NCBI RefSeq assembly: GCF_001194135.2
Contig: NC_069008.1
Coordinates: 10,599,190 to 10,638,476 of the forward strand
Direction: 5' to 3'
DNA length: 39,287 nt
From: Octopus bimaculoides
Taxonomy: Eukaryota
Notes under the pieces: generated by a model
The model's input: only the letters and a program-made list of their open reading frames with translations
The model's database searches: none
What the model was told of the DNA's origin: nothing
Program-made: the position numbers and the translations under genes
Shown here: positions 200 through 33,928 of the stretch, one piece after another
Layout: every line of letters begins with the position of its first letter
Numbering within the stretch: position 1 is the stretch's first letter

Positions 200-1746
200 C
201 ACTGATGTCATACCACACGTCATTCCAGATCTTTACACACAATCTCCACAACAGTTCTATCCCAATATCTCCCATCGCCTTCATACCTTGATGGGAAGTT
301 CATCCACACCAGGGCTCTTCCCATTCTTGGTATGGTACAGTGCCTGCCTCACTTCTTCTTTGAGTGTTTCCGGTTCTCTGTCTTTGGCTACAGCAAGTGC
401 AACGGGGAGATCTTCCTGCCTCCTTCTGTACAAATCGGTGCTGTATTCCACCTAGCTTTGATGTCCTCTTCCTCTGTCAGGATGTTACCTTCTTTATAGT
501 TGATGACATCACTATGTGGAGTCCACTTCCTCTTTCTACTCAATTCCTTCACCAAATGAAAAACAGACTTGATGTCACCTTTCTGCGACGCATCTTCCGC
601 CTCCAGACATATCCGCTTCAGATGGTTCCTCTTGTCCTCTAGTACCTGTCTGTTGTGCTGCTTGTCAAGTTCTCTCCATTCCTGATGATTTCCACTTACT
701 TTCGTTTTCCTCCTTCTTCTTGCAACGTCTAGTGTGTCGTCTGATAGCCACGGCCTCTTCAGAGTCCGTCTTTTAGGAATATTCCTCTTTGCAACTTCCT
801 TTGTGATGTTGACCATTTTCTCCCAAAGTGCATCTGATCTCCACTCTCCATTATAGTATGATTGGAAAAGCGGTAGAAATCTACTCTGCCTCTTGACACT
901 GAAAGCCTCTGGGATCTTTGTGTCATCGTAATGTGTTGTTTCCGTCTGCTTTTTCCGTGACCTCATCCGGATCTTAATCATTGCACACAGCAGTTGATGA
1001 TCGCTTCCGCAGTCTGCCCCTGGTCATGTCCTTACATTCATGAGTGCCGACCTCCATCGCCCTTGAATCATGATGTAGTCAATCTGGTTTCCAAACCGGT
1101 CTCCTAGGCTGGTCCAAGTGTACATCCTTCTCAGGTGATGCTGGAAGATGATGTTACCGATGTCTAGGTTGTTGGTGATACAAAGGTCAACCAGATCCTG
1201 TCCTCTTATATTCCGCTCCCCCAACCCGTGTTGGCCCACACTCGAATTGTTGGTAATGCTCTTCCCCACCTTGGCATTCCAATCTCGCATCACGATAATG
1301 ACGTCTCTCCGTGGAACATTGTCCAGTGTCTGCTGAACAACATCATAGAAATCCTGCATTTCTTCTTCACTTGCTTCACTCATTGGTGCATAAACCTGGA
1401 TGCGTGTAGTCTTTAGAGGGTGACCCCTCAGCCGTATGGTGACGATTCTGTCATTGACAGGATTGTATCCCATGACTGATGGGGTCACCTCTCTGGACGT
1501 CACAAATCCCACTCCATTATGTTGACCAGTCTCCCTTCCTGAGAAGACCATGTCTCCACTCTGTGCTGTGAATCTTCCCTGACCATTCCACCAGTGTTCC
1601 GACAGCCCGAGGACACTCACTCCGCATCTCTTCATCTCAGATGTTATCACATTTAGCTTCCCCACGATGAGTCCTCTGACATTCCATGTGGCAATGATCC
1701 ACTCTTTACGTAGTTGAATACCTCTCTTTTTCACAGCCGCAGTCAA
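200..1746 (-). mobile_element. RTE-clade LINE fragment: APE endonuclease, linker and start of RT (degenerate, 3' part missing)
   Basis: ORF 1024-1746 has APE motifs IATWNVRG, LGLSEHWW, IQVYAP, DWNAKVG and NQIDYIM. ORF 388-981 has the RTE linker (KRPWLSDDTL). KSPGVDELPI (RT domain 0) lies at about 290-330. Confidence 0.92.
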
Positions 1747-1849
1747 ATGACTGAAAAATGTAAAAGAATAAAAGAATAGCTAAACAATTACACAGTAAAT
1801 ACGAGCACACATCATATTATACATTAGCATGAATAAATAAGAAGGGACT

Positions 1850-14199: not shown

Positions 14200-15040
14200 T
14201 TTTCAACTACAAAATTTGAAAATTACTTCTGTAGCAAAATAGTTTCAGTAAAGTATGCGAGGTCAAAAGAGGGAGAGTAACGCCTGAAATCAACTTTGAG
14301 TCCAAATATGTTTTTTTTTCTCAAAGAAATCTATATTTTATTTTAGCTTATATGATAGATCTCGGCGAGAAGAATCTATCCATGTTACTTATATGCAAAA
14401 ATATTCAGTAGCAAAAAAAATACTGAGGTAAAAACCAGGGAAAAAACAGAGATTAATGCCTGAAGTCGACTTTCACTCCAAATATTATTTTTATTTCAGA
14501 AGAAAACTATATCTGAATTCAACTTTTCTGATAGATCTTCACTTGAGGAATCCAATGATGCCAACTATATCAACAAAAAATTTTAAATAAAAGACTACTG
14601 GGGCTAAATGTACCAAAAAAAGTGGTAACATCTAAAATCAAATTTAAAACAACCAATTTTAGTTAATGTTTACAACTTGACCTGGAAACTAAAATCAGAA
14701 AAAAAATAGTGCAATGGGTGTGAAAAAATATGTAGGAAACGAATATGAAAAAAAAAGAAAATGTGTGCAAAGCAATGGGAGGGTGAGAAAGCACCTTGGA
14801 AAATTCATAAGATATGAGTCTTTTCCTCATAATTTTTTAGAAAAATGGGGTTTTTTTTCAATAAAATTTTATAGAAATACCTTTCAAACAGCATACATTA
14901 CGATTATAAAGAAATTTGTGCGTAAAATCTTTTCCAAAGGGGTGATGAGAGGACCTCGGAAAATTCACAAGATCCAAGTTTTGTAACTTTTTAGAAAAAT
15001 GGGGTTTTTTCAATGAAATTTTATATAAAGATCTCTCAAA
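14200..15040. repeat. Probable non-autonomous DNA-transposon remnant with internal subrepeats
   Basis: Duplicated ~120-bp modules (gcctgaa.tc.acttt..tccaaatat..tgatagatct) at ~14280 and ~14455. The module tttttagaaaaatgggg..aaattttata occurs at ~14832 and ~14988 and is related to 35544-35815. Confidence 0.5.
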
Positions 15041-15289
15041 TGGCAATATGCTGTGCTTGAGAGGACTTGTTGAGCCAAATGCACCTGTGCTGGTGACATG
15101 TAAAGAACACCTTTTGAGCGTTGGGTCTCATGGAGGCAAAGTGGCTGAGTTCCTTTCGAGTGTTGGGCTTCATGGAGGCATTGACTGAGACCTTTGGCAT
15201 TGTGTCATGCTTGAGAAGATCCATGAAGCCGAGCAAAATTGCAGTCATGGCAGATGCTGGTTTCATGCAAATTGTCACCCATATCAGTG

Positions 15290-15505
15290 GCACATAAAAG
15301 CACCTCAGTGTCACGCAAATGGCACCCATACTGGTGGTACATAAAAGCACCCATTGCACTCTTGGAGTGGTTGGCTTTCGGAAGGGAATTCAGCCATAGA
15401 AAACCATGCCAAATCAGACTGGAGTCTGGTGCAGCCTTCAAGTGCACCAGCCTGGTCAAACAGTCCAATCCATGCGAACATGGACAACAGACATTAAATG
15501 ATGAT
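15290..15505 (+). mobile_element. Abundant RTE-tail SINE-like repeat (ggcacataaaagcac.. / ..gacattaaatgatgat)
   Basis: Homologous copies at 16345-16560, 16765-17000 and, reversed, 31062-31510. Confidence 0.7.
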
Positions 15506-15733
15506 AATATATATATAGCAATAATAAATCTCTGAGCGAGATATAAACAGTAGCCGCACGACATTGTGAAGTATATTTAGCACCAAAATGTGGCGGACTC
15601 ATAAGGGATGATGCTACTGTGGTTTATAGCCCCAGGAAGATATCTCCTCCAGCTGGCTATTGATACACTATCTGTGCCCTATCAGTATTTACAAAGGGGA
15701 AATCATCGTTCCCATCTCCAGCCTGATGTGATA

Positions 15734-15778
15734 CACATGGACACGAGTTTCTGGATAATGACCCGTCATCAATGTGTG
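15734..15778 (-). ncRNA. Second hammerhead copy (C3-to-U core variant)
   Basis: Minus strand reads cacaca-TTGATGA-cgggt catt atcca-GAAA-c tcgt GTC-catgtg. Confidence 0.7.
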
Positions 15779-16104
15779 ACAACCACTGGCTGGGGATGAG
15801 AAGTGATGAGTCCATGTGTATCACGTCAGGCTGGAGATGGGAACGATGATTTCCCTTTGTAAATACTGATTGGGCACAGACAGTGTCAATAGCCAGCTGA
15901 AGGAGATGTCTTCCTGGGGCTATAAACAACAGTAGCATCGTCCCTTATAGGTCAGCCACATTTCTGTGGCTGCTACTGTTTATATCTCACTCAGAGATTT
16001 ATTATTGCTTGTTTCTCCTTTATCGAGATCAGTGACTTTTCGTAACTGGAAAAAGTATATGTATTTGCATTGAAAATCATTTCTCATCCCCAGCCACTGG
16101 TTGT

Positions 16105-16149
16105 CACACGCTGATGACAGGTTATTACCCAGAAACTTGGGTCCATGTG
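16105..16149 (+). ncRNA. Minimal type I hammerhead ribozyme motif
   Basis: cacacg-CTGATGA(16111-16117)-caggt tatt accca-GAAA(16132-16135)-c ttgg GTC(16141-16143)-catgtg. Stem I pairs 5 of 6 positions, stem II has 3 bp, stem III has 2 bp with a 4-nt loop. Confidence 0.82.
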
Positions 16150-16276
16150 TATCACATCAGGCTGGAGATGGGAACGATGATTTCCCCTTTGCAAATACTG
16201 ATAGGGCACAGACAGTGTGTCAATAGCTATTGTCCCTTATGGATCAGCCACATTTAGGTGTCAAATATACTTCATG

Positions 16277-16344
<68 letters not shown>

Positions 16345-16346
<2 letters not shown>

Positions 16347-16560
16347 TGACCCTGCCAGTGCTGGTGTCCCATACAAAGGATCCAGTCTACACCGTAAATT
16401 GGTTGGCATTTGGCAGGGCATCCAGCTGTAAAAACCGTGACAAAATTAACCTTACCAGTGCTGGTGTCATGTAAAAAGCACTCAGTACACTCTGTGGGGT
16501 GGTTGGTGTTAGGAAGGGCATCTAGTCATATAAACCATGCCAAAACTGAATATCATAACA
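16345..16560 (+). mobile_element. RTE-tail SINE-like repeat fragments
   Basis: ttggcagggcatccagctgtaaaaacc and ttaggaagggcatctagtcatataaaccatgccaaa, homologous to 15370-15420. Confidence 0.65.
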
Positions 16561-16764
16561 ACACCCTATACCATGCTGGATGTAAGGATTTGATTAGGTA
16601 CTTCCCTATATTGACTGATCCTTCCCTCACCCCCGAACCCAGCACAACAGATACCTCTACCATCCTTGTTGTTATTACTAACTTGAGAAATGACAAAATG
16701 AATTTAATATTCTGACCTGGAAACCCTAGGGAACTGAATTTCATGTGGTTTTTGTGTACTTTTT

Positions 16765-17000
16765 ATTTATGATAGTGGTTGGTATTTGTAAGGGCACCCA
16801 GCCATGAAAACCATGCCAAAACAGACCTGGCTGGTACTAGTGCCACATTAAAAGCTCCCAATCCACTCTGTAAAATGGTTGGTTTTAGAAACAGCATCCA
16901 GCTGTAAAAACCATGCAAAAATGGACAGTGGAACTTGGTCCTGTCAAACCGTCCAAGCCATGCCCTCATGGAAGATGGACATTAAATGATGATGACGTTA
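16765..17000 (+). mobile_element. RTE-tail SINE-like repeat
   Basis: Ends ccatgccctcatggaagatggacattaaatgatgatga. Confidence 0.7.
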
Positions 17001-17019
17001 TGATGGTGTGTGTGTGTGT

Positions 17020-17165
17020 GTAGGCATGGTGTTGAGAAAATCCACTCCACAACAAACTATATGGTTCCAGATTTGATCCCATTGTGTGGCAACTTTGGCA
17101 AACATCTATAGCTTCAGGTTGACCAGTACTAAGTGAATGGAATTCCACAGACAGAAACTGTCAAG
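17020..17165 (+). mobile_element. Decayed SINE (ttgggcaagtgtcttctactatagc family)
   Basis: Reverse homologue of the better-preserved copies at 21901-22058 and 30375-30522. Confidence 0.6.
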
Positions 17166-17692
17166 AAAGATGAAGATGTTTTAGTATTTAACAATCCAAA
17201 TATAACGAGTTTAAAGAATGATAATTGCAAGATTAGTTTGACTATTATACAGTATGTGTGAAACAACGTTAATAGTTTCAGAAGTGGAGATCTGTGTTGT
17301 CTTCATAAAATATAGCAATCTACAGCAGTCGTCTCTCAAGTTTGAACAAAAGGGCAGAATTAGTAATTTCTTATAGCCATTTCCATTGCAATTTATTGAG
17401 GAATTTACAGCTTTCAGCTGGTTAGCAAATTTTATTTCTTCTGTAATAGATTTAACATCACCTGAAGGATGGATTCTTATTTCTAAAACAGTTTACCAAT
17501 ATTAAAACTTTATGAATAAGAGTCAGTATCCCTGCTCACAGCACAAAATGTTTTCTTTTCTTCTTTCTTTATTATTTATTTTTGGCACAAAGTACTAAAG
17601 AGGTTATTTGCTTCATGTACTTTTTACTATAAAAGTTACTCCACATTATTTTATTCTTGACACACACACATATATATACATGCATATATATT

Positions 17693-18529: not shown

Positions 18530-18706
18530 GGGCTGCAATTGCCCAAAAACTTCGACTCGAGAATTTCCTATACTGAATGTTCAGTTTCAGCTATTTCCAT
18601 AGCCTCTTCAGTAAGGACCACTCGTTCGGCTATTTCTGGGCTTAATCCACCATCAGCATATATGTATTTACCAAAAAAATTCATGGATGATTTAGCAAAT
18701 AGCTAA
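18530..18706. other. Candidate host-gene coding exon, strand unresolved
   Basis: Non-repetitive island with balanced GC. Plus strand: ttcacag|GLQLPKNF..DDLANS* (18530-18706). Minus strand: ag|LFAKSS..YADGGLSPEIAERVVLTEEAMEIAETEHS|gt (18574-18702, 129 nt). Confidence 0.3.
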
Positions 18707-19279
18707 TGTGTGAGTGTGTGTGTGTGTGTGTGTGNNNNNNNNNNNNNNNNNNNNNNNNNNNNNNNNNNNNNNNNNNNNNNNNNNNNNNNNNNNNNNNNNN
18801 NNNNNNNNNNNNNNNNNNNNNNNNNNNNNNNNNNATATATATATATATGTATATATATATATATGTATATGTGTGTATATATGTGTATGTATGTATATAT
18901 GAATAAGTATACGGGTAAATTGTATGTATGCATATGTATACGGGTAAAGGAACGGGTAATATGGTATAGTAAAAAGAAATAAACAAATTAATTAATCTAG
19001 TGGAAATTCACAGGAGAGCAATAAAAATAGAAAATTAAGGAGTTATCTCCCCCTATAATAACAGAAAGACGAAATCTAACGGGATTTTAAGAATTTAATG
19101 ATCGTTATGTATGCGTTTTTTCGTGTTTTGTTCCGATGGTAATCACTCCTGAAGAAGTGCCACATGTCAAAATCCAATGGACCAGTCACTGGANNNNNNN
19201 NNNATATGTTTGTGTGTGCATATGCATACATACATAAGTTTTGATTTTGGCATAAAGCTGGTAATTTCAGGAGAGAGAA

Positions 19280-22295: not shown

Positions 22296-25215
22296 TTTCA
22301 GTTGTAGGACTGCAACCATGGTGGAGCATCACTTTAATTTATTTTCTATCGGCATTGTTGTCACTTTATGGCTAGAAGTTGGTCTGTGATTGAACTGGTC
22401 GCAGCTGATCTCCTCTCAGCACATCCATCAATGGCTGCCTGGCCCGGTATAATTGTTAAGAGTTTATCCAATGTCTTTTTGTTTAATGTTTCAGTAGAGG
22501 TTCCTTTTATATCTCTGATTACTTTAGGAAGGCAGTTGAACAGTTGAGGACTTCCAAATATCAGACTTGTACAATAAAGTCCCTTTGCTCATGATTTCGA
22601 AGCTGACAGTATCTGACAGTTCATGCATTAAAATTCTCTCTCATGCTGAAGTTTGGAACAGGATGTTCCATATGTTTGTGATAGTATATCTCTCTCTTCA
22701 GCATTCAAGATAGTAGAGATACAACACTTTCAAATATTCCCAATAGTTAAGGCTTGTAACTAAAGATATTTTACTGGTAAACATTCTTTGTAACACTTCA
22801 ATTTCTTCTATGAGACCAAAGCTGTGAGCTGTAATCTAACTTGCTCAGAACTCAGGTTTTCCATAGAGTTAGCCGAACTACTGGTTCTCTTGTCACAGAG
22901 GCTTGTGAATCCATCCTGGGAGATGTCTGCATTTAGAAGTCAGTTTAGTGATGTGGCTAATGAAAGATGCATCATTGCACATGATTACTCCTAAGTTCTG
23001 TATGTCATTTGCACTCTAAATCATTCTGGCATCAAACATTGTGACTCGTGTGTATTCCCTCTGTAATGAAGAACCTGAAATTTTGATGTATTAAATTTCA
23101 TATTGTTTTAATCCACCCATTGATAAATGAGGTTTAGCTCATTTTGGAGTGTGACTGTATTTTCTGGAGTTTGGATAATCATTGATATTTTTGCATCATC
23201 AGTGTAACTCGTTAGCTTGTGATAGGTCGATGATAAATAATAATAGTCCTAGAACCGTTCCTTGAGGCATACCACTTATTACAGGTGACTTTGCAGATAG
23301 AAAACCATTTGCTGCAGCAGATTGGCTCCTACCATGTAGGAAGTCAAAGAGCCACCCTCTGAGTTTTCCTGTAATACCAAGATACCTTAACTTATGACAG
23401 ATGATTCCATGAACAATCTTGATAAATGCTTTAAACTAATCAAAGTATATATAGTCAGTGTCCTTTCCTTTCAAGAGATTATTAAGAACAGTGTTATGGT
23501 GTTGTAATAGTTGTGAAAGGATACTTCATCCAGTCCAAAAACCATGCTGTGTGTCATCTACAAAGTTGTTTAATTCTATTTTGGACAATGCATTTAATTA
23601 TTTCAAATGCATGAAATGTGAGAGAAACAGGTCTGTATCTTTTAGTTTCAGCCCTGTTATCCTCCTTTGTGTATAAATGTTAGTATTGATCTTTCAGTAG
23701 TTCTGAGAATTTGCAGGTATCTAGTAGCTTTTGAAATAATATCTCTAACGGCTTCACAAGACTGTTTTTGCATGTATGGCTGGAAGACTATTTGGTCTAG
23801 ATGCTGTGCTTCAATCTAGGTCATTAGCTGTAAGTATATCATCTTCCATAATATCGTTAATTTTCAGATGTGTCTGCAGTTGAGTCTTGAGGATAAAAAA
23901 ATTCATTTGGCTCATATATTATTTTTCTATCAGCTTTGTTGTCACTTTATGACTGGAAGTTGGTCTGTGATTGAGTTGGTAGTAGCTGATAGCTGATCTC
24001 CTCTGAGTGCATCCTTGAATGGCTGACTGGCCTGGTATTATTGTTAGGAGTTTATCCAATGTACTTTTGGTTGGGAAAATGCAATGTCATAATGTCAACT
24101 CAAGAAGGTACATATTTGTGATGAATCATTTGTATATGATCCATTTTGATCCATTAGAGAGCCAATCTGATTTTGTGTAGCTAATTTTTCTTTAGCAAAG
24201 GTGAAATAGATTTAATATTTTACACTGTTCATTGTTCCCTTTGCTAAATTTCTTTTTCATGAGATAGTTTTAGGTCCAGTTTGATGTTTTTTTTTCTTTT
24301 CAATTGTATCTGCTGAGAGAGTTTTGGTTTTTTAGTTGTTTTGTTGGTTTGGTTCTGTTACACATTAGTATCTGTTTATCTCGTGGAATCAAGTGCTTGT
24401 GAGAATGGGTCAGTTTATATGGGGCATGCCTTCAACAGATCCTGATTCACTCTTCATACGGTAGCTTCATTCCCTTGTTAACATTGGAGTTCCCAATATG
24501 TGGAGACTAGTTTGTTTTGAGGATTTCAGTATCAGCTTCATTCCCCTTGGCCTTCCTGTAATTCAAGTTCATGCAGAATGAGTCATGTTTGATGTTATTT
24601 GTGTGTGTTGCCCTTTTGATAACTGTATAATGTTGTGGTTGGAAATAGCTGTGGGAATGACCTGAGCACAGTGAATGAAGTCTGTATTGGTGGTAAAGAC
24701 AGACTAGGTTGGGTATGTATTTCCCCTAGTTGGATGGGTAATAATTTGTTGCATGAGGAAGTCTTTAGTGGTGTCAAGAAGAGCATTCATATCTCCTCTG
24801 TTCAGTTGTTTAATTTTTGGTTGGATGTAGCCCTCAGGTCGGCTGAAACTAGGAAAATTAAAGTTCTCTGCTAAAAGTACATTGGCCTGTGGTCTGGGCT
24901 CATTTGGGATTTGATTTATGAGCAAGAAAGCATCTTTGAAGTGATCTCCATAGTTAACTGCATCAGCAAGACAGTGGGTAATACCTATGATCAAATTGAG
25001 GTCAATCACATGCATTATTAGTGTATCACACACTGTATTGAAGTTGAAGAGGAGGACATTTGTTGCCAGGTCTTCTTGGATGAAAATCACTATTTCTCCT
25101 TGTTTCCATATTCTGTGGTCAGTTCTGAGTAGTATATAACATGACATATGTAATTCTGCATCCCCTGGTAGCAAAATTGGATGTAAGGGTAGTAGCTATG
25201 TGTATATAGTGGTGT
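22296..25215 (-). mobile_element. CR1-clade LINE (APE, RT and 3' tail), degenerate
   Basis: ORF 24704-25174 is APE-like (LLRTDHRIWKQG, ENFNFP, QQIITHPTRGN). RT motifs: FKAF (~23430), GMPQGTVLG (~23255-23275), YTDD (~23195-23210). C-terminus LDKLLTIIPGQ..TSSITD (~22380-22475). Confidence 0.9.
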
Positions 25216-28810: not shown

Positions 28811-28841
28811 NNNNNNNNNNNNNNNNNNNNNNNNNNNNNNN

Positions 28842-28914: not shown

Positions 28915-30320
28915 TTATTCTTTTTAGTCATTTGACTGCAGCTTTGTTGGAGCACCACCTTGAGGGATTCTTATTCTTTGTAAGTCTTGTATTAGGTTGT
29001 CAGGTATGAAATTTGTAGAAAAGAAAAAAAATAGTTTGCTAATGTTTTATAAATATAAGGAATAGTTTTATTCATTAAAGTATGCCTCCATATTGTCAAT
29101 ACACTTTTGTCATTTCAGTGGTAGCTTGTCCACCTTGGAACTGTAAAAGCCTGGCAATTTAGAGTTACTATAATCTTGCAAGGCCTGTTTTACAGTATTT
29201 TCGGAATTAAATTTTTTCCTATCAAAAAATTATCCAAATTCTGGAAGAAGTGGTAGTCAGTGGGGGCAAGATCAGGTGAGTATGGTGGATCATGAAGAAC
29301 TTCCAACTCCAACTCCTGTAGTTTCACCAATGTCATTTTTATATGTATGGTCTGGCATTGTCTTAGAATAAAATAGGAGTGGATCTGTTGACCAATCTAG
29401 GCTGTTTTTTTTATGTAAGTTTCAGCATCATTTGGTCCAGTTGGCTGCAGTATACTTTGGCTGTGATTGATGAGCCAGGTTTAATGAAATCATAATGAAT
29501 CACACCTACACCAGACCACCAAACACACACCATCAACTCGTCTTTATCCAACCATTGTAGTGAATGTTTACAGTTGTTGTATAGGATCCATTTCTCATCA
29601 CATGTTACAATTCGATTAAAAAATGATTCATTTTTGTGACAAGGATGTAGTATAATCCAGGCTTCCAAATGTTGCTGTGTCTGATTTTCATTGAGTTCAT
29701 GTGGAACCCACTTATCCAAATTTTTCACTTTACTGATTTGAGTCAATATTGTTTGCTTGCTAACACCAAACAACAACAACAATAATTCAGAGGCACTTTG
29801 AGATGGATCTGACTTGACGGTGGCTTTCGGTTCGTCATTATCCACCTTTGTTTCTGGTTGACCGTGTTGCTCATTTGTGTGGTCAAAGTTACCAGAATAA
29901 AATTTTGCAAACCAATTTAATACTGTCTGTTGTGCAATAACATTAGAATGAAATATTCCATTAATGTTTTGAGCTGTCTGTGATGCTATATTTCCAAGAA
30001 ATAACTCCTATTTCAAAACTGTACGAATTTCAGACCTATCAATCTCTAAACAAAAATAGCAAAAACCAATTTATGAATACTTTATAAAGTGCAAAATGAG
30101 TTAGAATAAAGAAATAGATGTGTTAGCTTTCTAACAAAACATAAAGATTGTCAAAATATAATAATGGCAGAAAATGAGCAGCTGTCAAAGTTTACCACAT
30201 ACCTTACTATAAATTTCATACTTGACGACCTAATACTTATTTTATCGGTCTCTTTTACCAAACTTCTAAGTTACAGGAACATAAACACACCAGCATCGGT
30301 TTTCAAGCGATGGCAGGGGG
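28915..30320 (-). mobile_element. SINE with CR1-like tail, split by the mariner (28915-28991 and 30234-30320)
   Basis: The joined flanks are collinear with the intact copy at 39020-39215. Confidence 0.75.
28992..30233 (-). mobile_element. Full-span mariner transposon (1242 bp, inactive), inserted into a SINE
   Basis: 27-bp TIRs ttaggttgtcaggtatgaaatttgtag and ctataaatttcatacttgacgacctaa. TA at 28990-28991 and 30234-30235. Motifs WVPHEL and VTCDEKW (ORF 29411-29845), and PPYSPDLAPTDYHFF (~29240-29290). Confidence 0.95.
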
Positions 30321-30522: not shown

Positions 30523-31061
30523 GCCTTTATATATATATATATGTATATATATAAAGAATAAAACAAATGGGGTTTGAATTTTGCTAGAGTTGTTTTGATA
30601 GGATTTTATTGATGCGTTCGTAGATTACTTCAAAGCATAGATCTACCATCCTTAGGTAAAATTTAAATAGGTATAAATATCGATGATTACCTATTCAACA
30701 ATCAGCATGATGAGTAAGTGATATTTTAAAAAGAATAATCAAATTTATAGAGAAAGCAAAGCAATATTAACAGACTTTCTAAGAACATATAAGGTCAAAC
30801 CTGCCCTATTTTTCAAGCAGTTATCTGAATTAGTTTATAGCATGAACCACTCTGAAGTGGTGTCAGAAAGTAGGCTGGTCAGTCAAAACATTTCTGAGAA
30901 GATATCTTGTGGATTAATTGAAATAAAACAGCAATCTTTTGGGTTGCAGCACTACATGAAATTGTCATCGCCATTCCATGCCAGTACCCCCACCCCACAT
31001 ATAGACATATATACTTGCATACAATTATACATAAGTATATATATATATATATCATCATCAT

Positions 31062-31510
31062 CATCATCATCATCGTTTAACGTCTGCTTTCCATGCTAGC
31101 ATGGGTTGGATGATTTGACTGAGGACTGGCAAGCCAGTAGGCTGCACCAGGCTCCAATCTGATCTGGTAGAGTTTCTACACCTGGATGCCCTTCCTAATG
31201 CCAAGTATAATGGGTGCTTTTACGAGCCACCGGCACAAGGGCCAGTCAGGCGGTACTGGCAACGACCATGTTCAAAATGGTGTTTTTTACATGCCACCTG
31301 CACAGGAGCCAGTCCAGCAGCACTGGCAACGACCTCACTCGAATGATTTTCTAACATGCCACTGGCACAAGTGCCAGTAAGGTGATGTTGGTAGATAATG
31401 CTCAAATGGTGCTATTTACATGCTACTAGCATGGAAGCCAGACAGCTGCTCTGGCAATGATCACACTCGGACAGTGCTATTAGTGCTCCACTGGCACAGG
31501 TGCCGGTCAT
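31062..31510 (-). mobile_element. RTE-tail SINE-like repeat with internal gccactggcac subrepeats and (cat)n tail
   Basis: catcatcgtttaacgtctgctttccatgctagcatgggttgg is the reverse of the tail at 15470-15505. Confidence 0.75.
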
Positions 31511-31647: not shown

Positions 31648-31741
31648 TATAATACTGTACACTTTGGATAACATATCTATATGCGTGTATGTATGTATGT
31701 ATGTATATATATATATATATATATATATNNNNNNNNNNGTC

Positions 31742-32440: not shown

Positions 32441-32844
32441 TATGTTAACTTCATGAGGAGGTAATTCAGTTGATCAGACAACTAAATACTTATCAGTGAA
32501 ACTGATGGTGATCTACATACACACACACATACAAACACGGACGATTTTAGCCCGAAGGATAGTCTGAAATCACAAGGCAAGATATATAAATTTGCCAGTT
32601 TATTGTGTTTTCACAGCATGAAACTATTAGTAGTTTGTATTTACTATGTATATTAAATGATATATATATATATATATATATATATCTGTTCTAGTATAAT
32701 TAAATTCTATGTCTTTGTGCAGCTGAAGATTGCTCTGCATTTTAAATTGATGTAATGATTGCATTGTTCAATTAAATGGAGTTACATGAAACGATCATAC
32801 TGCATTACCTCTGGATATCCTTGTTGCTTATTTTGATATATATA

Positions 32845-33337
32845 NNNNNNNNNNNNNNNNNNNNNNNNNNNNNNNNNNNNNNNNNNNNNNNNNNNNNNNN
32901 NNNNNNNNNNNNNNNNNNNNNNNNNNNNNNNNNNNNNNNNNNNNNNNNNNNNNNNNNNNNNNNNNNNNNNNNNNNNNNNNNNNNNNNNNNNNNNNNNNNN
33001 NNNNNNNNNNNNNNNNNNNNNNNNNNNNNNNNNNNNNNNNNNNNNNNNNNNNNNNNNNNNNNNNNNNNNNNNNNNNNNNNNNNNNNNNNNNNNNNNNNNN
33101 NNNNNNNNNNNNNNNNNNNNNNNNNNNNNNNNNNNNNNNNNNNNNNNNNNNNNNNNNNNNNNNNNNNNNNNNNNNNNNNNNNNNNNNNNNNNNNNNNNNN
33201 NNNNNNNNNNNNNNNNNNNNNNNNNNNNNNNNNNNNNNNNNNNNNNNNNNNNNNNNNNNNNNNNNNNNNNNNNNNNNNNNNNNNNNNNNNNNNNNNNNNN
33301 NNNNNNNNNNNNNNNNNNNNNNNNNNNNNNNNNNNNN
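32845..33337. other. Assembly gap (N run) inside (TA)n
   Basis: Direct reading. Other gaps at 18735-18834, 19194-19203, 28811-28841 and 31729-31738, mostly adjacent to microsatellites. Confidence 0.99.
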
Positions 33338-33384
<47 letters not shown>

Positions 33385-33543
33385 CATGTATATATATGTG
33401 TGTATGTGTATATATATGTATATATATATATGTGTGTATGTATATGTATATATATATGTGTGTATATGTATATATATGTGTGTATGTATATATATATGTA
33501 TATATGTGTGTGTATATATATATGTGTGTATATATATGTGTGT

Positions 33544-33928
33544 GGAGGCGCAATGGCCCAGTGGTTAGGGCAGCAGAGTTGCGGTCGTAGGATCGCGGTT
33601 TCGATTCCCAGACCGGGCGTTGTGAATGTTTATTGAGCGAAAACACCTAAAGCTCCACGAGGCTCCGGCAAGGGATGGTGGCGAACCCTGCTGTACTCTT
33701 TCACCACAACTTTCTCTCACTCTTACTTCCTGTTTCTGTGGGCCTGTAATTCAAAGGGTCAGCCTTGTCACACTGTGTCACGCTGAATCTCCCTGAGAAC
33801 TACGTTAAGGGTACACGTGTCTGTGGAGTGCTCAGCCACTTGCACGTTAATTTCATGAGCAGGCTGTTTTGTTGATCAGATCGACTGGAACCCTCGACGT
33901 CGTAAGCGACGGAGTGCCAACAACAACA
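33544..33928 (+). mobile_element. Young full-length tRNA-derived SINE
   Basis: A box tggcccagtgg (33554-33564), B box ggtttcgattccc (33597-33609), many CpGs retained, (caa)n tail. Confidence 0.88.

What the first reader, a model, noticed from the sequence alone, without database searches (positions are those of the whole stretch)
15813..16143. 331-nt unit between two hammerhead cleavage sites: candidate cephalopod retrozyme circular RNA
Seen: GTC|catgtgt occurs at 15810-15812 and again at 16141-16143. The second has a full core (CTGATGA, stem II, GAAAC, stem I). The sequence after each site is homologous, so these are head-to-tail units with no ORF. Circularising 15813-16143 rebuilds an intact hammerhead across the junction. 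Known: metazoan non-LTR retrozymes are tandem units of ~170-400 nt with type I hammerheads, expressed as small circRNAs in corals, mussels and axolotl. Inference: this is such a family, and I do not recall one described for octopus. A Penelope pseudo-LTR remnant is the main alternative. This copy carries stem mismatches and may be inactive.
Basis: partly seen in the sequence, partly recalled or inferred. Interest (0 to 1): 0.9.

Follow-up and report, generated by a model that had tools for sequence, protein, structure and literature searches.

The report
Decayed octopus hammerhead retroelement insertion
This is an old, damaged, roughly 760-bp insertion of a protein-less mobile element in the Octopus bimaculoides genome that carries a hammerhead self-cleaving RNA motif and bears the marks of Penelope-type insertion; it belongs to a known kind of element and is not a working circular-RNA gene at this locus.

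Summary
The sequence facts are mostly right. GTC|CATGTGT occurs at 15810-15819 and 16141-16150, 331 nt apart. The second site follows a complete type I hammerhead core (CTGATGA 16111-16117, GAAAC 16132-16136). The unit has no ORF.

- A third, inverted copy (15517-15807) lies head-to-head with the unit.
- The first "site" has no ribozyme upstream, so this locus cannot excise a 331-nt RNA.
- No Rfam hammerhead model scores the motif at any threshold. Helix II is weak (C.A at 10.1/11.1), and the inverted copy has a dead core (C3>U).

The block 15517-16274 is one insertion into the (GAT)n(AT)n tail of a SINE. It has a ~16-bp target-site duplication, a 1.4-unit partial tandem, an adjacent inverted 5'-truncated copy, and a 50-nt "tail" at one end only. 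These are the published hallmarks of Penelope-like-element (PLE) integration.

The unit (~354 nt before a deletion, GC 43%, circular fold z = -4.4) fits the metazoan non-LTR retrozyme / non-autonomous PLE class.

The window is O. bimaculoides. It holds no PLE ORF and no other copy. Copy number, arrays, circRNA and cleavage could not be tested.

Verdict: new member of a known kind, decayed copy, modest interest.

The parts
15502..15516 (.). Left copy of the candidate target-site duplication, TGATAATATATATAT. This is the (GAT)n-to-(AT)n boundary of the host SINE tail.
   Evidence: The uninterrupted SINE copy at 31040-31400(-) has this boundary only once.
15517..15807 (-). Inverted, 5'-truncated copy. 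Read on the minus strand it runs hammerhead domain, a, x, b. Its 3' end (...ATTATTGCT) abuts the (TA)n target.
   Evidence: Inverted repeats I1-I4, blastn, alignment A1.
15517..15566 (-). 50-nt 'tail'. This 3' extension is present on the inverted copy and absent from the other outward-facing 3' end, which stops at ...ATACTTCA (16274).
   Evidence: Compare the PLE tail described in PMC8557442 and PMC11167929.
15740..15807 (-). Hammerhead domain of the inverted copy. The core is mutated to UUGAUGA (C3>U, + strand 15766-15772) and G2.1>A. Helix II is CGGG/UCCA. Helix III is AC-UCGU-GU. The predicted site lies between 15740 and 15739.
15808..15812 (+). 5' end of the + strand cDNA copy, GAGTC. This is the last nucleotides of helix III plus the cleavage triplet, with no ribozyme core upstream. 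The head-to-head junction with the inverted copy is at about 15807/15808.
   Evidence: (D6 starts at 15807).
15813..16143 (+). The flagged 331-nt unit: a (15813-15968), b (15969-16009), c (16010-16075), hammerhead domain (16076-16143). It lacks the 23-nt x segment present in the other two copies.
16090..16165 (+). The only hammerhead with an intact core.
- Distal helix I: CCAGCC (16090-16095) with GGCTGG (16160-16165).
- Proximal helix I: CACACG (16105-16110) with CATGTG (16144-16149), with an A.C mismatch at 1.2/2.2.
- CTGATGA: 16111-16117.
- Helix II plus loop: 16118-16131, with C.A at 10.1/11.1, A.C at 10.2/11.2, and only 2 G-C pairs.
- GAA: 16132-16134.
- Helix III: AC-TTGG-GT, 16135-16142.
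- C17: 16143.
   Evidence: Not detected by Rfam.
16144..16274 (+). Partial third copy: segment a with a 42-column internal gap relative to the inverted copy, plus part of x. Its 3' end (...ATACTTCA) abuts the (TA)n target.
16275..16290 (.). Right copy of the candidate target-site duplication, TGATATATATATATAT.
16277..16344 (.). (AT)34 microsatellite, the target tract, probably expanded since insertion.
   Evidence: TRF.

Best explanation
Window 15517-16274 is a single, old retrotransposition event of a short (~354 nt), ORF-less, hammerhead-bearing element. It was integrated by Penelope-like-element (PLE) machinery into the (AT)n tail of an octopus SINE.

**Inferred mechanism**
1. A GIY-YIG-type endonuclease nicked the (TA)n tract.
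2. Both DNA ends primed reverse transcription on element RNA, starting at two internal sites 50 nt apart (after ...ATACTTCA and after ...ATTATTGCT).
3. The right-hand cDNA ran through more than one unit of a multimeric or circular template: x', a, hammerhead, c, b, a, stopping 5 nt past the next GUC.
4. The left-hand cDNA stopped at the start of the hammerhead domain.
5. The two were joined head-to-head.

**What it is**
- The element belongs to the class called metazoan non-LTR retrozymes, that is, non-autonomous PLE derivatives with a canonical-layout type I hammerhead.
- In active family members, tandem transcripts would self-cleave at GUC|C and the ~350-nt monomers would be ligated into circles.

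**This locus is dead**
- Only one of the three copies retains the catalytic core, and its helix II is degraded.
- No second ribozyme exists on the same strand.
- The three copies have each drifted about 4-5%.
- If transcribed, its main property would be a hairpin with arms of roughly 250-290 nt that are almost fully base-paired.

**Shown versus inferred**
- Shown: the anatomy, the TSD, the tail, the core, the fold statistics and the host species.
- Inferred: PLE mobilisation, ancestral ribozyme activity, and circRNA formation by the family.
For: **One insertion event**
- The (GAT)n-to-(AT)n boundary of the host SINE tail occurs once in the uninterrupted paralogue but on both sides of the block: 15502-15516 and 16275-16290.
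- The three copies carry equal private changes (4/4/4 in about 105 shared columns). This star-like pattern fits simultaneous origin.

**Four PLE-type hallmarks** (PMC8557442 Fig. 2 and text; PMC11167929)
- Partial head-to-tail tandem (D6/D8/D10).
- Adjacent inverted 5'-truncated copy (I1-I4).
- A tail at one end only, here 50 nt.
- A (TA)n target with a long TSD.
- The b|c junction inside the central unit (16009/16010) is the same point as the inverted copy's 3' terminus.

**Hammerhead**
- All invariant core positions are present in the + copy.
- Helix I is 6 bp, helix II has 4 positions, and helix III is 2 bp plus a tetraloop. [quoted passage not shown]
- The relaxed descriptor expects 0.035 hits per window.
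- Closely spaced hammerheads on opposite strands are reported as typical of truncated PLE insertions (PMC4209133).

**Retrozyme-like unit properties**
- GC 42.6%; circular MFE z = -4.4; 65% paired.
- No ORF and no Pfam match reaching a family's cut-off.

**Host context**
- The host is O. bimaculoides.
- Penelope elements are abundant in octopus genomes (PMC8967140, PMC13282606).
Against: - No other copy of the unit was seen anywhere: the rest of the window, 20 kb of another O. bimaculoides chromosome, two metagenome scans and one viral scan, and the protein and contig look-ups. A multi-copy family is therefore assumed, not shown.
- No RT/GIY-YIG ORF lies in or near the locus.
- Rfam hammerhead models give no score at all.
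- Both full hammerhead copies share non-canonical C10.1.A11.1 and A1.2.C2.2. The template may already have been ribozyme-dead, or the motif may be fortuitous.
- The two hammerhead copies are not independent, being products of the same event, so there is no covariation evidence.
- The tail is 50 nt rather than the published 30-40 nt.
- A TSD inside a microsatellite is inherently ambiguous.
- The hammerhead fold is not the MFE fold (-9.6 vs -26.9 kcal/mol).
Confidence: 0.68

Rival explanations
1. One reading: an active retrozyme gene whose transcript is cut at two hammerhead sites (15812/15813 and 16143/16144) and circularised into a 331-nt RNA.
For: Two GTC|CATGTGT junctions lie 331 nt apart. 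The unit folds as a highly paired circle. One complete core is present.
Against: - There is no ribozyme core upstream of the first junction; it is replaced by the inverted copy.
- The single intact-core hammerhead has only 2 Watson-Crick pairs in helix II and a mismatch in helix I.
- Rfam is negative.
- The central unit carries a 23-nt deletion relative to its siblings.
- The copies have diverged 5-14%.
Confidence: 0.04
2. The hammerhead resemblance is fortuitous. The block is a PLE-mobilised or otherwise duplicated/inverted non-coding repeat, with no ribozyme history.
For: - The strict descriptor rejects it.
- Rfam gives no score.
- The relaxed descriptor would give thousands of chance hits genome-wide (0.035 per 39 kb).
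- The C.A and A.C mismatches next to the core are shared by both copies.
- A second, unrelated hammerhead-like motif lies 2.4 kb away. This shows that such motifs turn up in this sequence.
Against: - The motif has exactly the helix lengths and loop sizes of canonical metazoan type I hammerheads (PMC4209133).
- It sits in the element class that is known to carry them.
- Helix III (2 bp plus a 4-nt loop) and the distal helix I stem (CCAGCC/GGCUGG) are kept in both copies despite 13% divergence in the domain.
Confidence: 0.17
3. It is the remnant of an autonomous Penelope-like element: pseudo-LTRs left after internal deletion of the RT/GIY-YIG ORF. It is not a dedicated non-autonomous family.
For: The architecture is the same as a PLE insertion. 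Hammerheads lie in PLE pseudo-LTRs (PMC4209133). In Poseidon-type PLEs the ORF starts at the AUG of CUGAUGA (PMC11167929).
Against: - The frame from that AUG has stops every 10-25 codons, several of them shared between copies. The template was therefore already ORF-less at insertion.
- The head-to-tail b|c junction is clean, with no ORF fragment between units.
- PLE hammerheads are mostly 'minimal' variants with a long helix II and almost no helix III (PMC4209133), unlike this one.
- No RT or EN remnant lies within 6 kb.
Confidence: 0.11

Closest known systems
Metazoan non-LTR retrozymes, especially those of the mussel Mytilus galloprovincialis (Cervera & de la Pena 2020, PMC7229834)
   Same: - Mollusc host.
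- ORF-less unit of about 330-390 nt.
- GC below 45%.
- Type I hammerhead with a 2-bp helix III plus tetraloop.
- Highly self-paired predicted circle.
- Head-to-tail copies.
- TSD longer than 4 bp.
- Co-existence with PLEs in the genome.
   Different: - Here there are only 1.4 tandem units plus an inverted copy.
- There is one intact core, with a weak helix II.
- No evidence exists for thousands of copies, arrays, expression or circles.
Penelope-like element insertions and their pseudo-LTR hammerheads (Cervera & de la Pena 2014, PMC4209133; Craig et al. 2021, PMC8557442; Frangieh et al. 2024, PMC11167929)
   Same: - Partial tandem plus adjacent inverted 5'-truncated copy.
- One-sided tail.
- (TA)n target and variable-length TSD.
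- Hammerheads a few hundred bp apart on opposite strands.
   Different: - No RT/GIY-YIG ORF.
- The unit is about 10 times shorter than a PLE.
- The hammerhead has the canonical layout, not the minimal PLE variant.
- The tail is 50 nt, not 30-40 nt.
Newt satellite 2 / axolotl Rtz_331 and Rtz_353 repeats (PMC7229834)
   Same: - Unit length of about 330-350 nt.
- Type I hammerhead with a very short helix III.
- One axolotl family has a mismatch (U.U) at the base of helix II, analogous to the C.A here.
- These hammerheads probably act as dimers across tandem copies.
   Different: - Those are vertebrate elements with about 10^5 copies in long arrays and demonstrated cleavage and circles.
- None of that is shown here.
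Non-autonomous PLE derivatives such as MRC1 / non-autonomous Chlamys elements of Chlamydomonas (PMC8557442)
   Same: Short ORF-less elements that make pseudo-LTRs and multicopy head-to-tail insertions using PLE machinery.
   Different: - Those lack canonical hammerheads.
- They are defined by 3'-end similarity to an autonomous partner, which could not be tested here.

Membership tests
Hammerhead ribozyme, type I (Rfam clan CL00010, RF00163) | Invariant core: C3-U4-G5-A6-N7-G8-A9, G12-A13-A14, A15.1-U16.1 pair, H17 not G. | tested here: met
   + copy 16111-16143: CUGAUGA, GAA, A15.1...U16.1, C17. Not met in the inverted copy (C3>U).
Hammerhead ribozyme, type I (Rfam clan CL00010, RF00163) | Three helices around the core, with helix I open and helices II and III capped, each able to pair. 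| tested here: inconclusive
   - Topology is correct.
- Helix I pairs 5 of 6 positions, plus a 6-bp distal stem.
- Helix III is 2 bp plus a tetraloop.
- Helix II has C.A at 10.1/11.1 in both copies, with only 2 further pairs in the + copy and 3 in the inverted copy.
Hammerhead ribozyme, type I (Rfam clan CL00010, RF00163) | Covariance-model score at or above the family's gathering threshold. | tested here: not met
   No hammerhead family is reported at gathering threshold, at E<=10 on 1 kb, or at E<=10 on 106 nt.
Hammerhead ribozyme, type I (Rfam clan CL00010, RF00163) | Site-specific self-cleavage after H17. | not testable with these tools
   Needs in vitro transcription or cleavage-end mapping.
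Metazoan non-LTR retrozyme (PMC7229834; 'active' sense of bioRxiv 10.64898/2026.07.22.740005) | A type I hammerhead in every tandem unit. | tested here: not met
   Only one same-strand hammerhead exists. The upstream unit boundary (15812/15813) has no core.
Metazoan non-LTR retrozyme (PMC7229834; 'active' sense of bioRxiv 10.64898/2026.07.22.740005) | Head-to-tail repeats of 150-450 bp, from dimers to large multimers. | tested here: inconclusive
   Period 331 nt (about 354 with segment x). Only 1.4 units are present, and TRF reports nothing.
Metazoan non-LTR retrozyme (PMC7229834; 'active' sense of bioRxiv 10.64898/2026.07.22.740005) | No ORF, LTR, PBS or PPT; GC below 45-50%; TSD (when present) longer than 4 bp; highly self-paired RNA. 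| tested here: met
   - No ORF and no Pfam match reaching a family's cut-off.
- GC 42.6% and circular fold z = -4.4.
- TSD of about 16 bp.
Metazoan non-LTR retrozyme (PMC7229834; 'active' sense of bioRxiv 10.64898/2026.07.22.740005) | [quoted passage not shown] | not testable with these tools
   No eukaryote nucleotide or RNA-seq collection is available. All indirect routes returned nothing.
Penelope-like element (autonomous) | Single ORF with a telomerase-like RT and a GIY-YIG endonuclease between pseudo-LTRs. | tested here: not met
   - There is no ORF in the unit.
- The only RT fragment in the window (22.3-24.3 kb, minus strand) has LINE motifs.
- No GIY-YIG pattern is present.
Penelope-type insertion signature (applies to autonomous and non-autonomous elements) | Partial tandem, adjacent inverted 5'-truncated copy, one-sided 30-40 bp tail, microsatellite target with variable TSD. 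| tested here: met
   The tail is 50 nt, somewhat longer than published.

The most novel reading that the evidence does not exclude
Octopus has a live retrozyme family that makes ~350-nt circular RNAs. Its hammerhead carries two fixed A.C mismatches directly flanking the catalytic core (A1.2.C2.2 and C10.1.A11.1, shared by both copies here). The ribozyme would be gated by the cephalopod's exceptionally active A-to-I editing, because inosine would turn both mismatches into I-C pairs.

A weaker version is more likely, at roughly 0.3: such a family simply exists and is expressed, which would make it the first described for cephalopods. Its Penelope-type head-to-head insertions would then contribute to the unusually large pool of long dsRNA that is hyper-edited in octopus.
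Probability: 0.03. Interest if true: 0.8.

Novelty: new member of a known kind. Interest (0 to 1): 0.3.

Why it matters
**If a family stands behind this copy**
- It would extend hammerhead retrozymes / non-autonomous PLEs to cephalopods. The searchable literature describes none there, although molluscs in general (mussel) are covered.
- It would give a concrete query, the ~354-nt unit, for finding them.

**Value of the locus as an insertion**
- It is a clean textbook example of the PLE insertion signature on a very small element: tandem plus inverted copy plus one-sided tail, in a (TA)n target.
- That supports the view that animal retrozymes ride on PLE machinery.

**Link to RNA editing**
- Head-to-head insertions of this kind create near-perfect hairpins with arms of roughly 250-290 nt (fold z = -30).
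- O. bimaculoides is reported to have an exceptional load of such dsRNA-forming loci and of hyper-editing (PMC5625713).
- PLE-type insertions may therefore be one source of that load.

**The locus itself** is dead and of no functional consequence beyond that.

Tried and rejected
**Rfam**
- Three scans over the flagged motif found no hammerhead family: gathering threshold on the whole window, and E<=10 on 1 kb and on 106 nt.
- A fourth scan, over the second motif, gave only Hammerhead_3 at 15.1 bits.

**Looking for other copies**
- blastn of the unit against the window found only the three local copies.
- Exact look-up of the antisense 63-aa pseudo-ORF and of a 286-aa window ORF found neither on record.
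- A homology search with the 63-aa pseudo-ORF found no candidates.
- Exact and degenerate DNA patterns found no matches in JGI metagenomes (two scans) or IMG/VR.
- 20 kb of O. bimaculoides chromosome CM046614.1, fetched via P0003, held no copy.
- In one search the near-identical octopus hits came only from NCBI/UniRef/EukProt and none from Logan. I took this to mean that octopus read assemblies are not in the protein collection. I therefore did not spend the last homology search on further pseudo-ORFs.

**Looking for a Penelope ORF**
- Pfam on the ten ORFs of 120 aa or more, and on ten further RT-like segments chosen by eye, found only an RTE-type endonuclease, a mariner transposase fragment and a LINE RT fragment.
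- A regex for GIY-YIG and YxDD motifs in six frames of the window and L001 found no PLE.
- No usable octopus PLE protein sequence was available. Craig et al.'s supplements are not held.

**Hypotheses rejected**
- MITE or foldback transposon: rejected because the outer termini are not inverted repeats of each other (AGCAATAAT... versus ...ATACTTCA).
- tRNA-derived SINE for the unit or its flanks: ARAGORN found nothing.
- PLE N-terminal coding remnant starting at the AUG of CUGAUGA: rejected because stops are shared between copies.
- RNA-editing footprint among the copies: there is no A>G excess.
- The ORFs at 32.8-33.6 kb are artefacts of a 493-N assembly gap.
Full report
**1. What is in the sequence**

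The decamer GTCCATGTGT occurs at 15810-15819 and 16141-16150. The sequences that follow are homologous, with start-to-start spacing 331-332 nt and 92-94% identity (families D6, D8, D10).

Upstream of the second junction lies CACACG-CTGATGA-CAGGTTATTACCCA-GAA-ACTTGGGT-C|CATGTG (16105-16149). Every invariant hammerhead position is there: C3-A9, G12-A14, the A15.1-U16.1 pair, and C17. The topology is type I: helix I is open, and helices II and III are capped.

The unit has no meaningful ORF. The longest sense ORF is 47 aa, stops occur in all frames, and no Pfam match reaches a family's cut-off.

**2.

Repeat analysis and alignment show a third copy in inverted orientation at 15517-15807. It meets the + strand copies head-to-head at about 15807/15808.

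Consequently only TGAGTC (5-6 nt) precedes the first CATGTGT as part of the + copy. Beyond that lies the reverse complement of another copy, so the first "cleavage site" has no ribozyme. A transcript of this locus has one same-strand hammerhead and cannot release a 331-nt monomer.

The + strand carries 1.4 units, not an array, and TRF reports no 331-nt period.

The inverted copy's own hammerhead is dead: C3>U (UUGAUGA) and G2.1>A.

The central unit lacks a 23-nt segment (x) that both siblings have, so the ancestral unit was about 354 nt. The third copy has a 42-column internal gap relative to the inverted copy.

**3. How good is the hammerhead?**

Rfam 15 reports no hammerhead family at gathering threshold, at E<=10 on 1 kb, or at E<=10 on just 106 nt.

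My strict type I descriptor rejects the motif. It requires helix II of at least 3 contiguous bp, helix III of at least 2 bp, and helix I with at least 5 of 6 pairs. Chance expectation for this descriptor is 0.01 per window.

A descriptor relaxed just enough to admit the motif expects 0.035 hits per window (34 of 1000 shuffles). Because it was relaxed post hoc, this is an optimistic figure. Scaled to a 2-3 Gb genome it means thousands of chance hits.

In favour of the motif, its layout is exactly the one given for canonical metazoan type I hammerheads in PMC4209133:
- helix I of 6 bp, here followed by an internal loop and a 6-bp distal stem CCAGCC/GGCUGG;
- helix II of 4 positions with a 6-nt loop;
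- helix III of 2 bp capped by a 4-nt loop.

PMC7229834 describes the same helix III for invertebrate retrozymes.

The helix III loop reads UUGG, UCGU and (partial copy) ..UGAG in the three copies. These are each one or two changes from a palindromic UCGA. That would fit the dimer-acting hammerheads of tandem repeats, but three data points cannot establish it.

Against the motif, both full copies share two non-canonical pairs flanking the core, A1.2.C2.2 and C10.1.A11.1. The + copy adds A.C at 10.2/11.2. The hammerhead fold (-9.6 kcal/mol) is far from the MFE fold (-26.9 kcal/mol) of the domain.

The two copies stem from one event, so they give no independent covariation evidence. I put the probability that this is a genuine, ancestrally functional hammerhead at about 0.65-0.7.

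**4. The block is one insertion with a Penelope-type signature**

The flanks belong to a SINE-like family with several copies in the window (D1/D3/D5/D7). An uninterrupted copy at 31040-31400(-) ends ...TTAAACGAT(GAT)n(AT)n, so the (GAT)n-to-(AT)n boundary occurs once.

At the locus that boundary appears on both sides: TGATAATATATATAT at 15502-15516 and TGATATATATATATAT at 16275-16290. This is a ~16-bp target-site duplication bracketing 15517-16274.

Both outward-facing ends are element 3' ends, but they differ:
- The inverted copy ends ...ATTATTGCT (15517).
- The direct copy ends 50 nt earlier in element coordinates, at ...ATACTTCA (16274).

The head-to-tail junction inside the central unit (b|c at 16009/16010) coincides with the first of these termini.

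The three copies carry equal numbers of private substitutions (4, 4, 4 over about 105 shared columns). That is as expected if they arose together.

The combination seen here is the signature described for PLE insertions (PMC8557442, Fig. 2 and text):
- partial tandem;
- adjacent inverted 5'-truncated copy;
- a tail on one side only;
- a (TA)n microsatellite target;
- a TSD of variable, non-trivial length.

Mechanistically it is explained by cleavage and extension of both DNA strands and by reverse transcription starting at two nearby internal sites of the RNA (PMC11167929). PMC4209133 also notes that pairs of hammerheads 100-700 bp apart on opposite strands are common and probably mark truncated PLE insertions. 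Here the two cores are about 340 bp apart on opposite strands.

**5. No Penelope ORF**

The unit is ORF-less, and stops in the frame starting at the AUG of CUGAUGA are shared between copies. That AUG is where Poseidon-type PLE ORFs start (PMC11167929). The template was therefore already non-coding at insertion.

In the whole window, Pfam finds only:
- an RTE-type endonuclease ORF at 1027-1779(-);
- a mariner transposase fragment at 29411-30007(-);
- a frameshifted RT at about 22.3-24.3 kb(-) with CR1/jockey-type LINE motifs.

No GIY-YIG pattern exists. The cDNA spans more than one unit, including the b|c junction. The template was therefore a multimeric or circular RNA of an ORF-less unit, or PLE-style template jumping created the tandem. 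The data cannot separate these.

**6. Properties of the unit RNA**

- GC is 42.6%.
- As a circle its MFE is -100.5 kcal/mol, against -78.8 +/- 5.0 kcal/mol for dinucleotide shuffles (z = -4.4), with 65% of bases paired. This is in line with the 'highly self-paired' retrozyme circles of PMC7229834.
- The locus as a whole (15517-16100) folds into a hairpin whose arms are almost fully paired over roughly 250-290 nt: -359 kcal/mol versus -158 kcal/mol for shuffles, z = -30.

**7. Host and age**

The RTE endonuclease ORF is 100% identical to XP_014774753.1 of Octopus bimaculoides, so the 'cephalopod' guess is right.

Each copy has drifted about 4-5% since the event. A repeat-divergence calibration published for O. 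vulgaris gives JC 0.09 as about 25 My (PMC13282606). On that scale the insertion is of the order of 10-15 My old. This is a rough inference.

**8. Comparison with what is known**

In how it works and where it belongs, the element fits the metazoan non-LTR retrozyme class, now argued to be non-autonomous PLE derivatives (PMC7229834; bioRxiv 10.64898/2026.07.22.740005).

- Features met: low GC, no ORF, TSD longer than 4 bp, self-paired RNA, type I hammerhead of the invertebrate layout, PLE co-existence in octopus (PMC8967140, PMC13282606).
- Features not met at this locus: a hammerhead in every unit, and at least a dimer.
- Features untestable here: family copy number, arrays, circRNA, cleavage.

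I therefore file it as a decayed insertion of a retrozyme-like, PLE-mobilised element, not as an active retrozyme.

**9. Novelty**

Three full-text searches and a search of the one supplementary file of PMC7229834 held as text found no paper connecting hammerheads or retrozymes with octopus or any cephalopod.

The authors of PMC7229834 did scan RefSeq invertebrate genomes and report such repeats 'from molluscs to arthropods'. A cephalopod family would therefore be a new member of a known kind, not a new kind.

**10. Limits**

No eukaryotic nucleotide or transcriptome collection was available. All indirect routes to further copies failed. The decisive genome-wide and wet-lab tests are listed under next steps.

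Noticed in passing
window 18563-18623, minus strand: A second, unrelated hammerhead-like motif with a complete core and much better helices II (6 bp, GGAA loop) and III (5 bp): GGUCCUUA-CUGAAGA-GGCUAUGGAAAUAGCU-GAAA-CUGAACAUUCAGU-A|UAGGAAAU.
- The strict descriptor finds it, with 0.01 hits expected per window.
- Rfam gives only Hammerhead_3 at 15.1 bits, E = 0.83 on 141 nt.
- Helix I is weak.
- It is single copy, about 110 nt from an assembly gap.
- In frame it reads ...EEAMEIAETEHSV*, so it may be a chance match in a coding or TE remnant.
   Followed up: partly
window 15517-16100: The head-to-head copies form a hairpin as RNA with arms almost fully paired over roughly 250-290 nt (MFE -359 vs -158 kcal/mol for shuffles, z = -30). 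O. bimaculoides is reported to have an exceptional load of dsRNA-forming loci and of A-to-I hyper-editing (PMC5625713). Penelope-type inverted insertions could be one source of that load.
   Followed up: partly
window 15270-15516, 16346-16993, 31040-31400(-): A SINE-like family built of ~100-nt sub-repeats and ending ...GACATTAAATGAT(GAT)n(AT)n hosts the insertion. ARAGORN finds no tRNA-like part in 14500-17500. The family was not identified by name.
   Followed up: partly
window 391-1779, minus strand: An RTE-type LINE endonuclease ORF, followed by a further 211-aa open frame, is 100% identical to RefSeq XP_014774753.1, which is annotated 'craniofacial development protein 2-like'. This looks like a transposon ORF annotated as a host gene.
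   Followed up: partly
window ~22300-24300, minus strand: A frameshifted LINE reverse-transcriptase remnant with CR1/jockey-type motifs (FxKAFD-like, PQGxVLG, YTDDA). Pfam RVT_1 matches only weakly (E = 0.009). It is not a Penelope RT.
   Followed up: yes
window 29411-30007, minus strand: A mariner-type transposase fragment (Pfam Transposase_1, E = 1e-13).
   Followed up: no
window 32776-33646: Three long overlapping ORFs on both strands (286, 272 and 201 aa) are artefacts of a 493-N assembly gap at 32845-33337. Other gaps lie at 18735-18834, 19194-19203, 28811-28841 and 31729-31738.
   Followed up: yes
window ~25950, plus strand: A short open frame containing ...SYIDDILVDK..., an LTR-retrotransposon-like RT motif. 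The Pfam scan was run on minus-strand segments, so this plus-strand frame was not itself scanned and remains unclassified.
   Followed up: no
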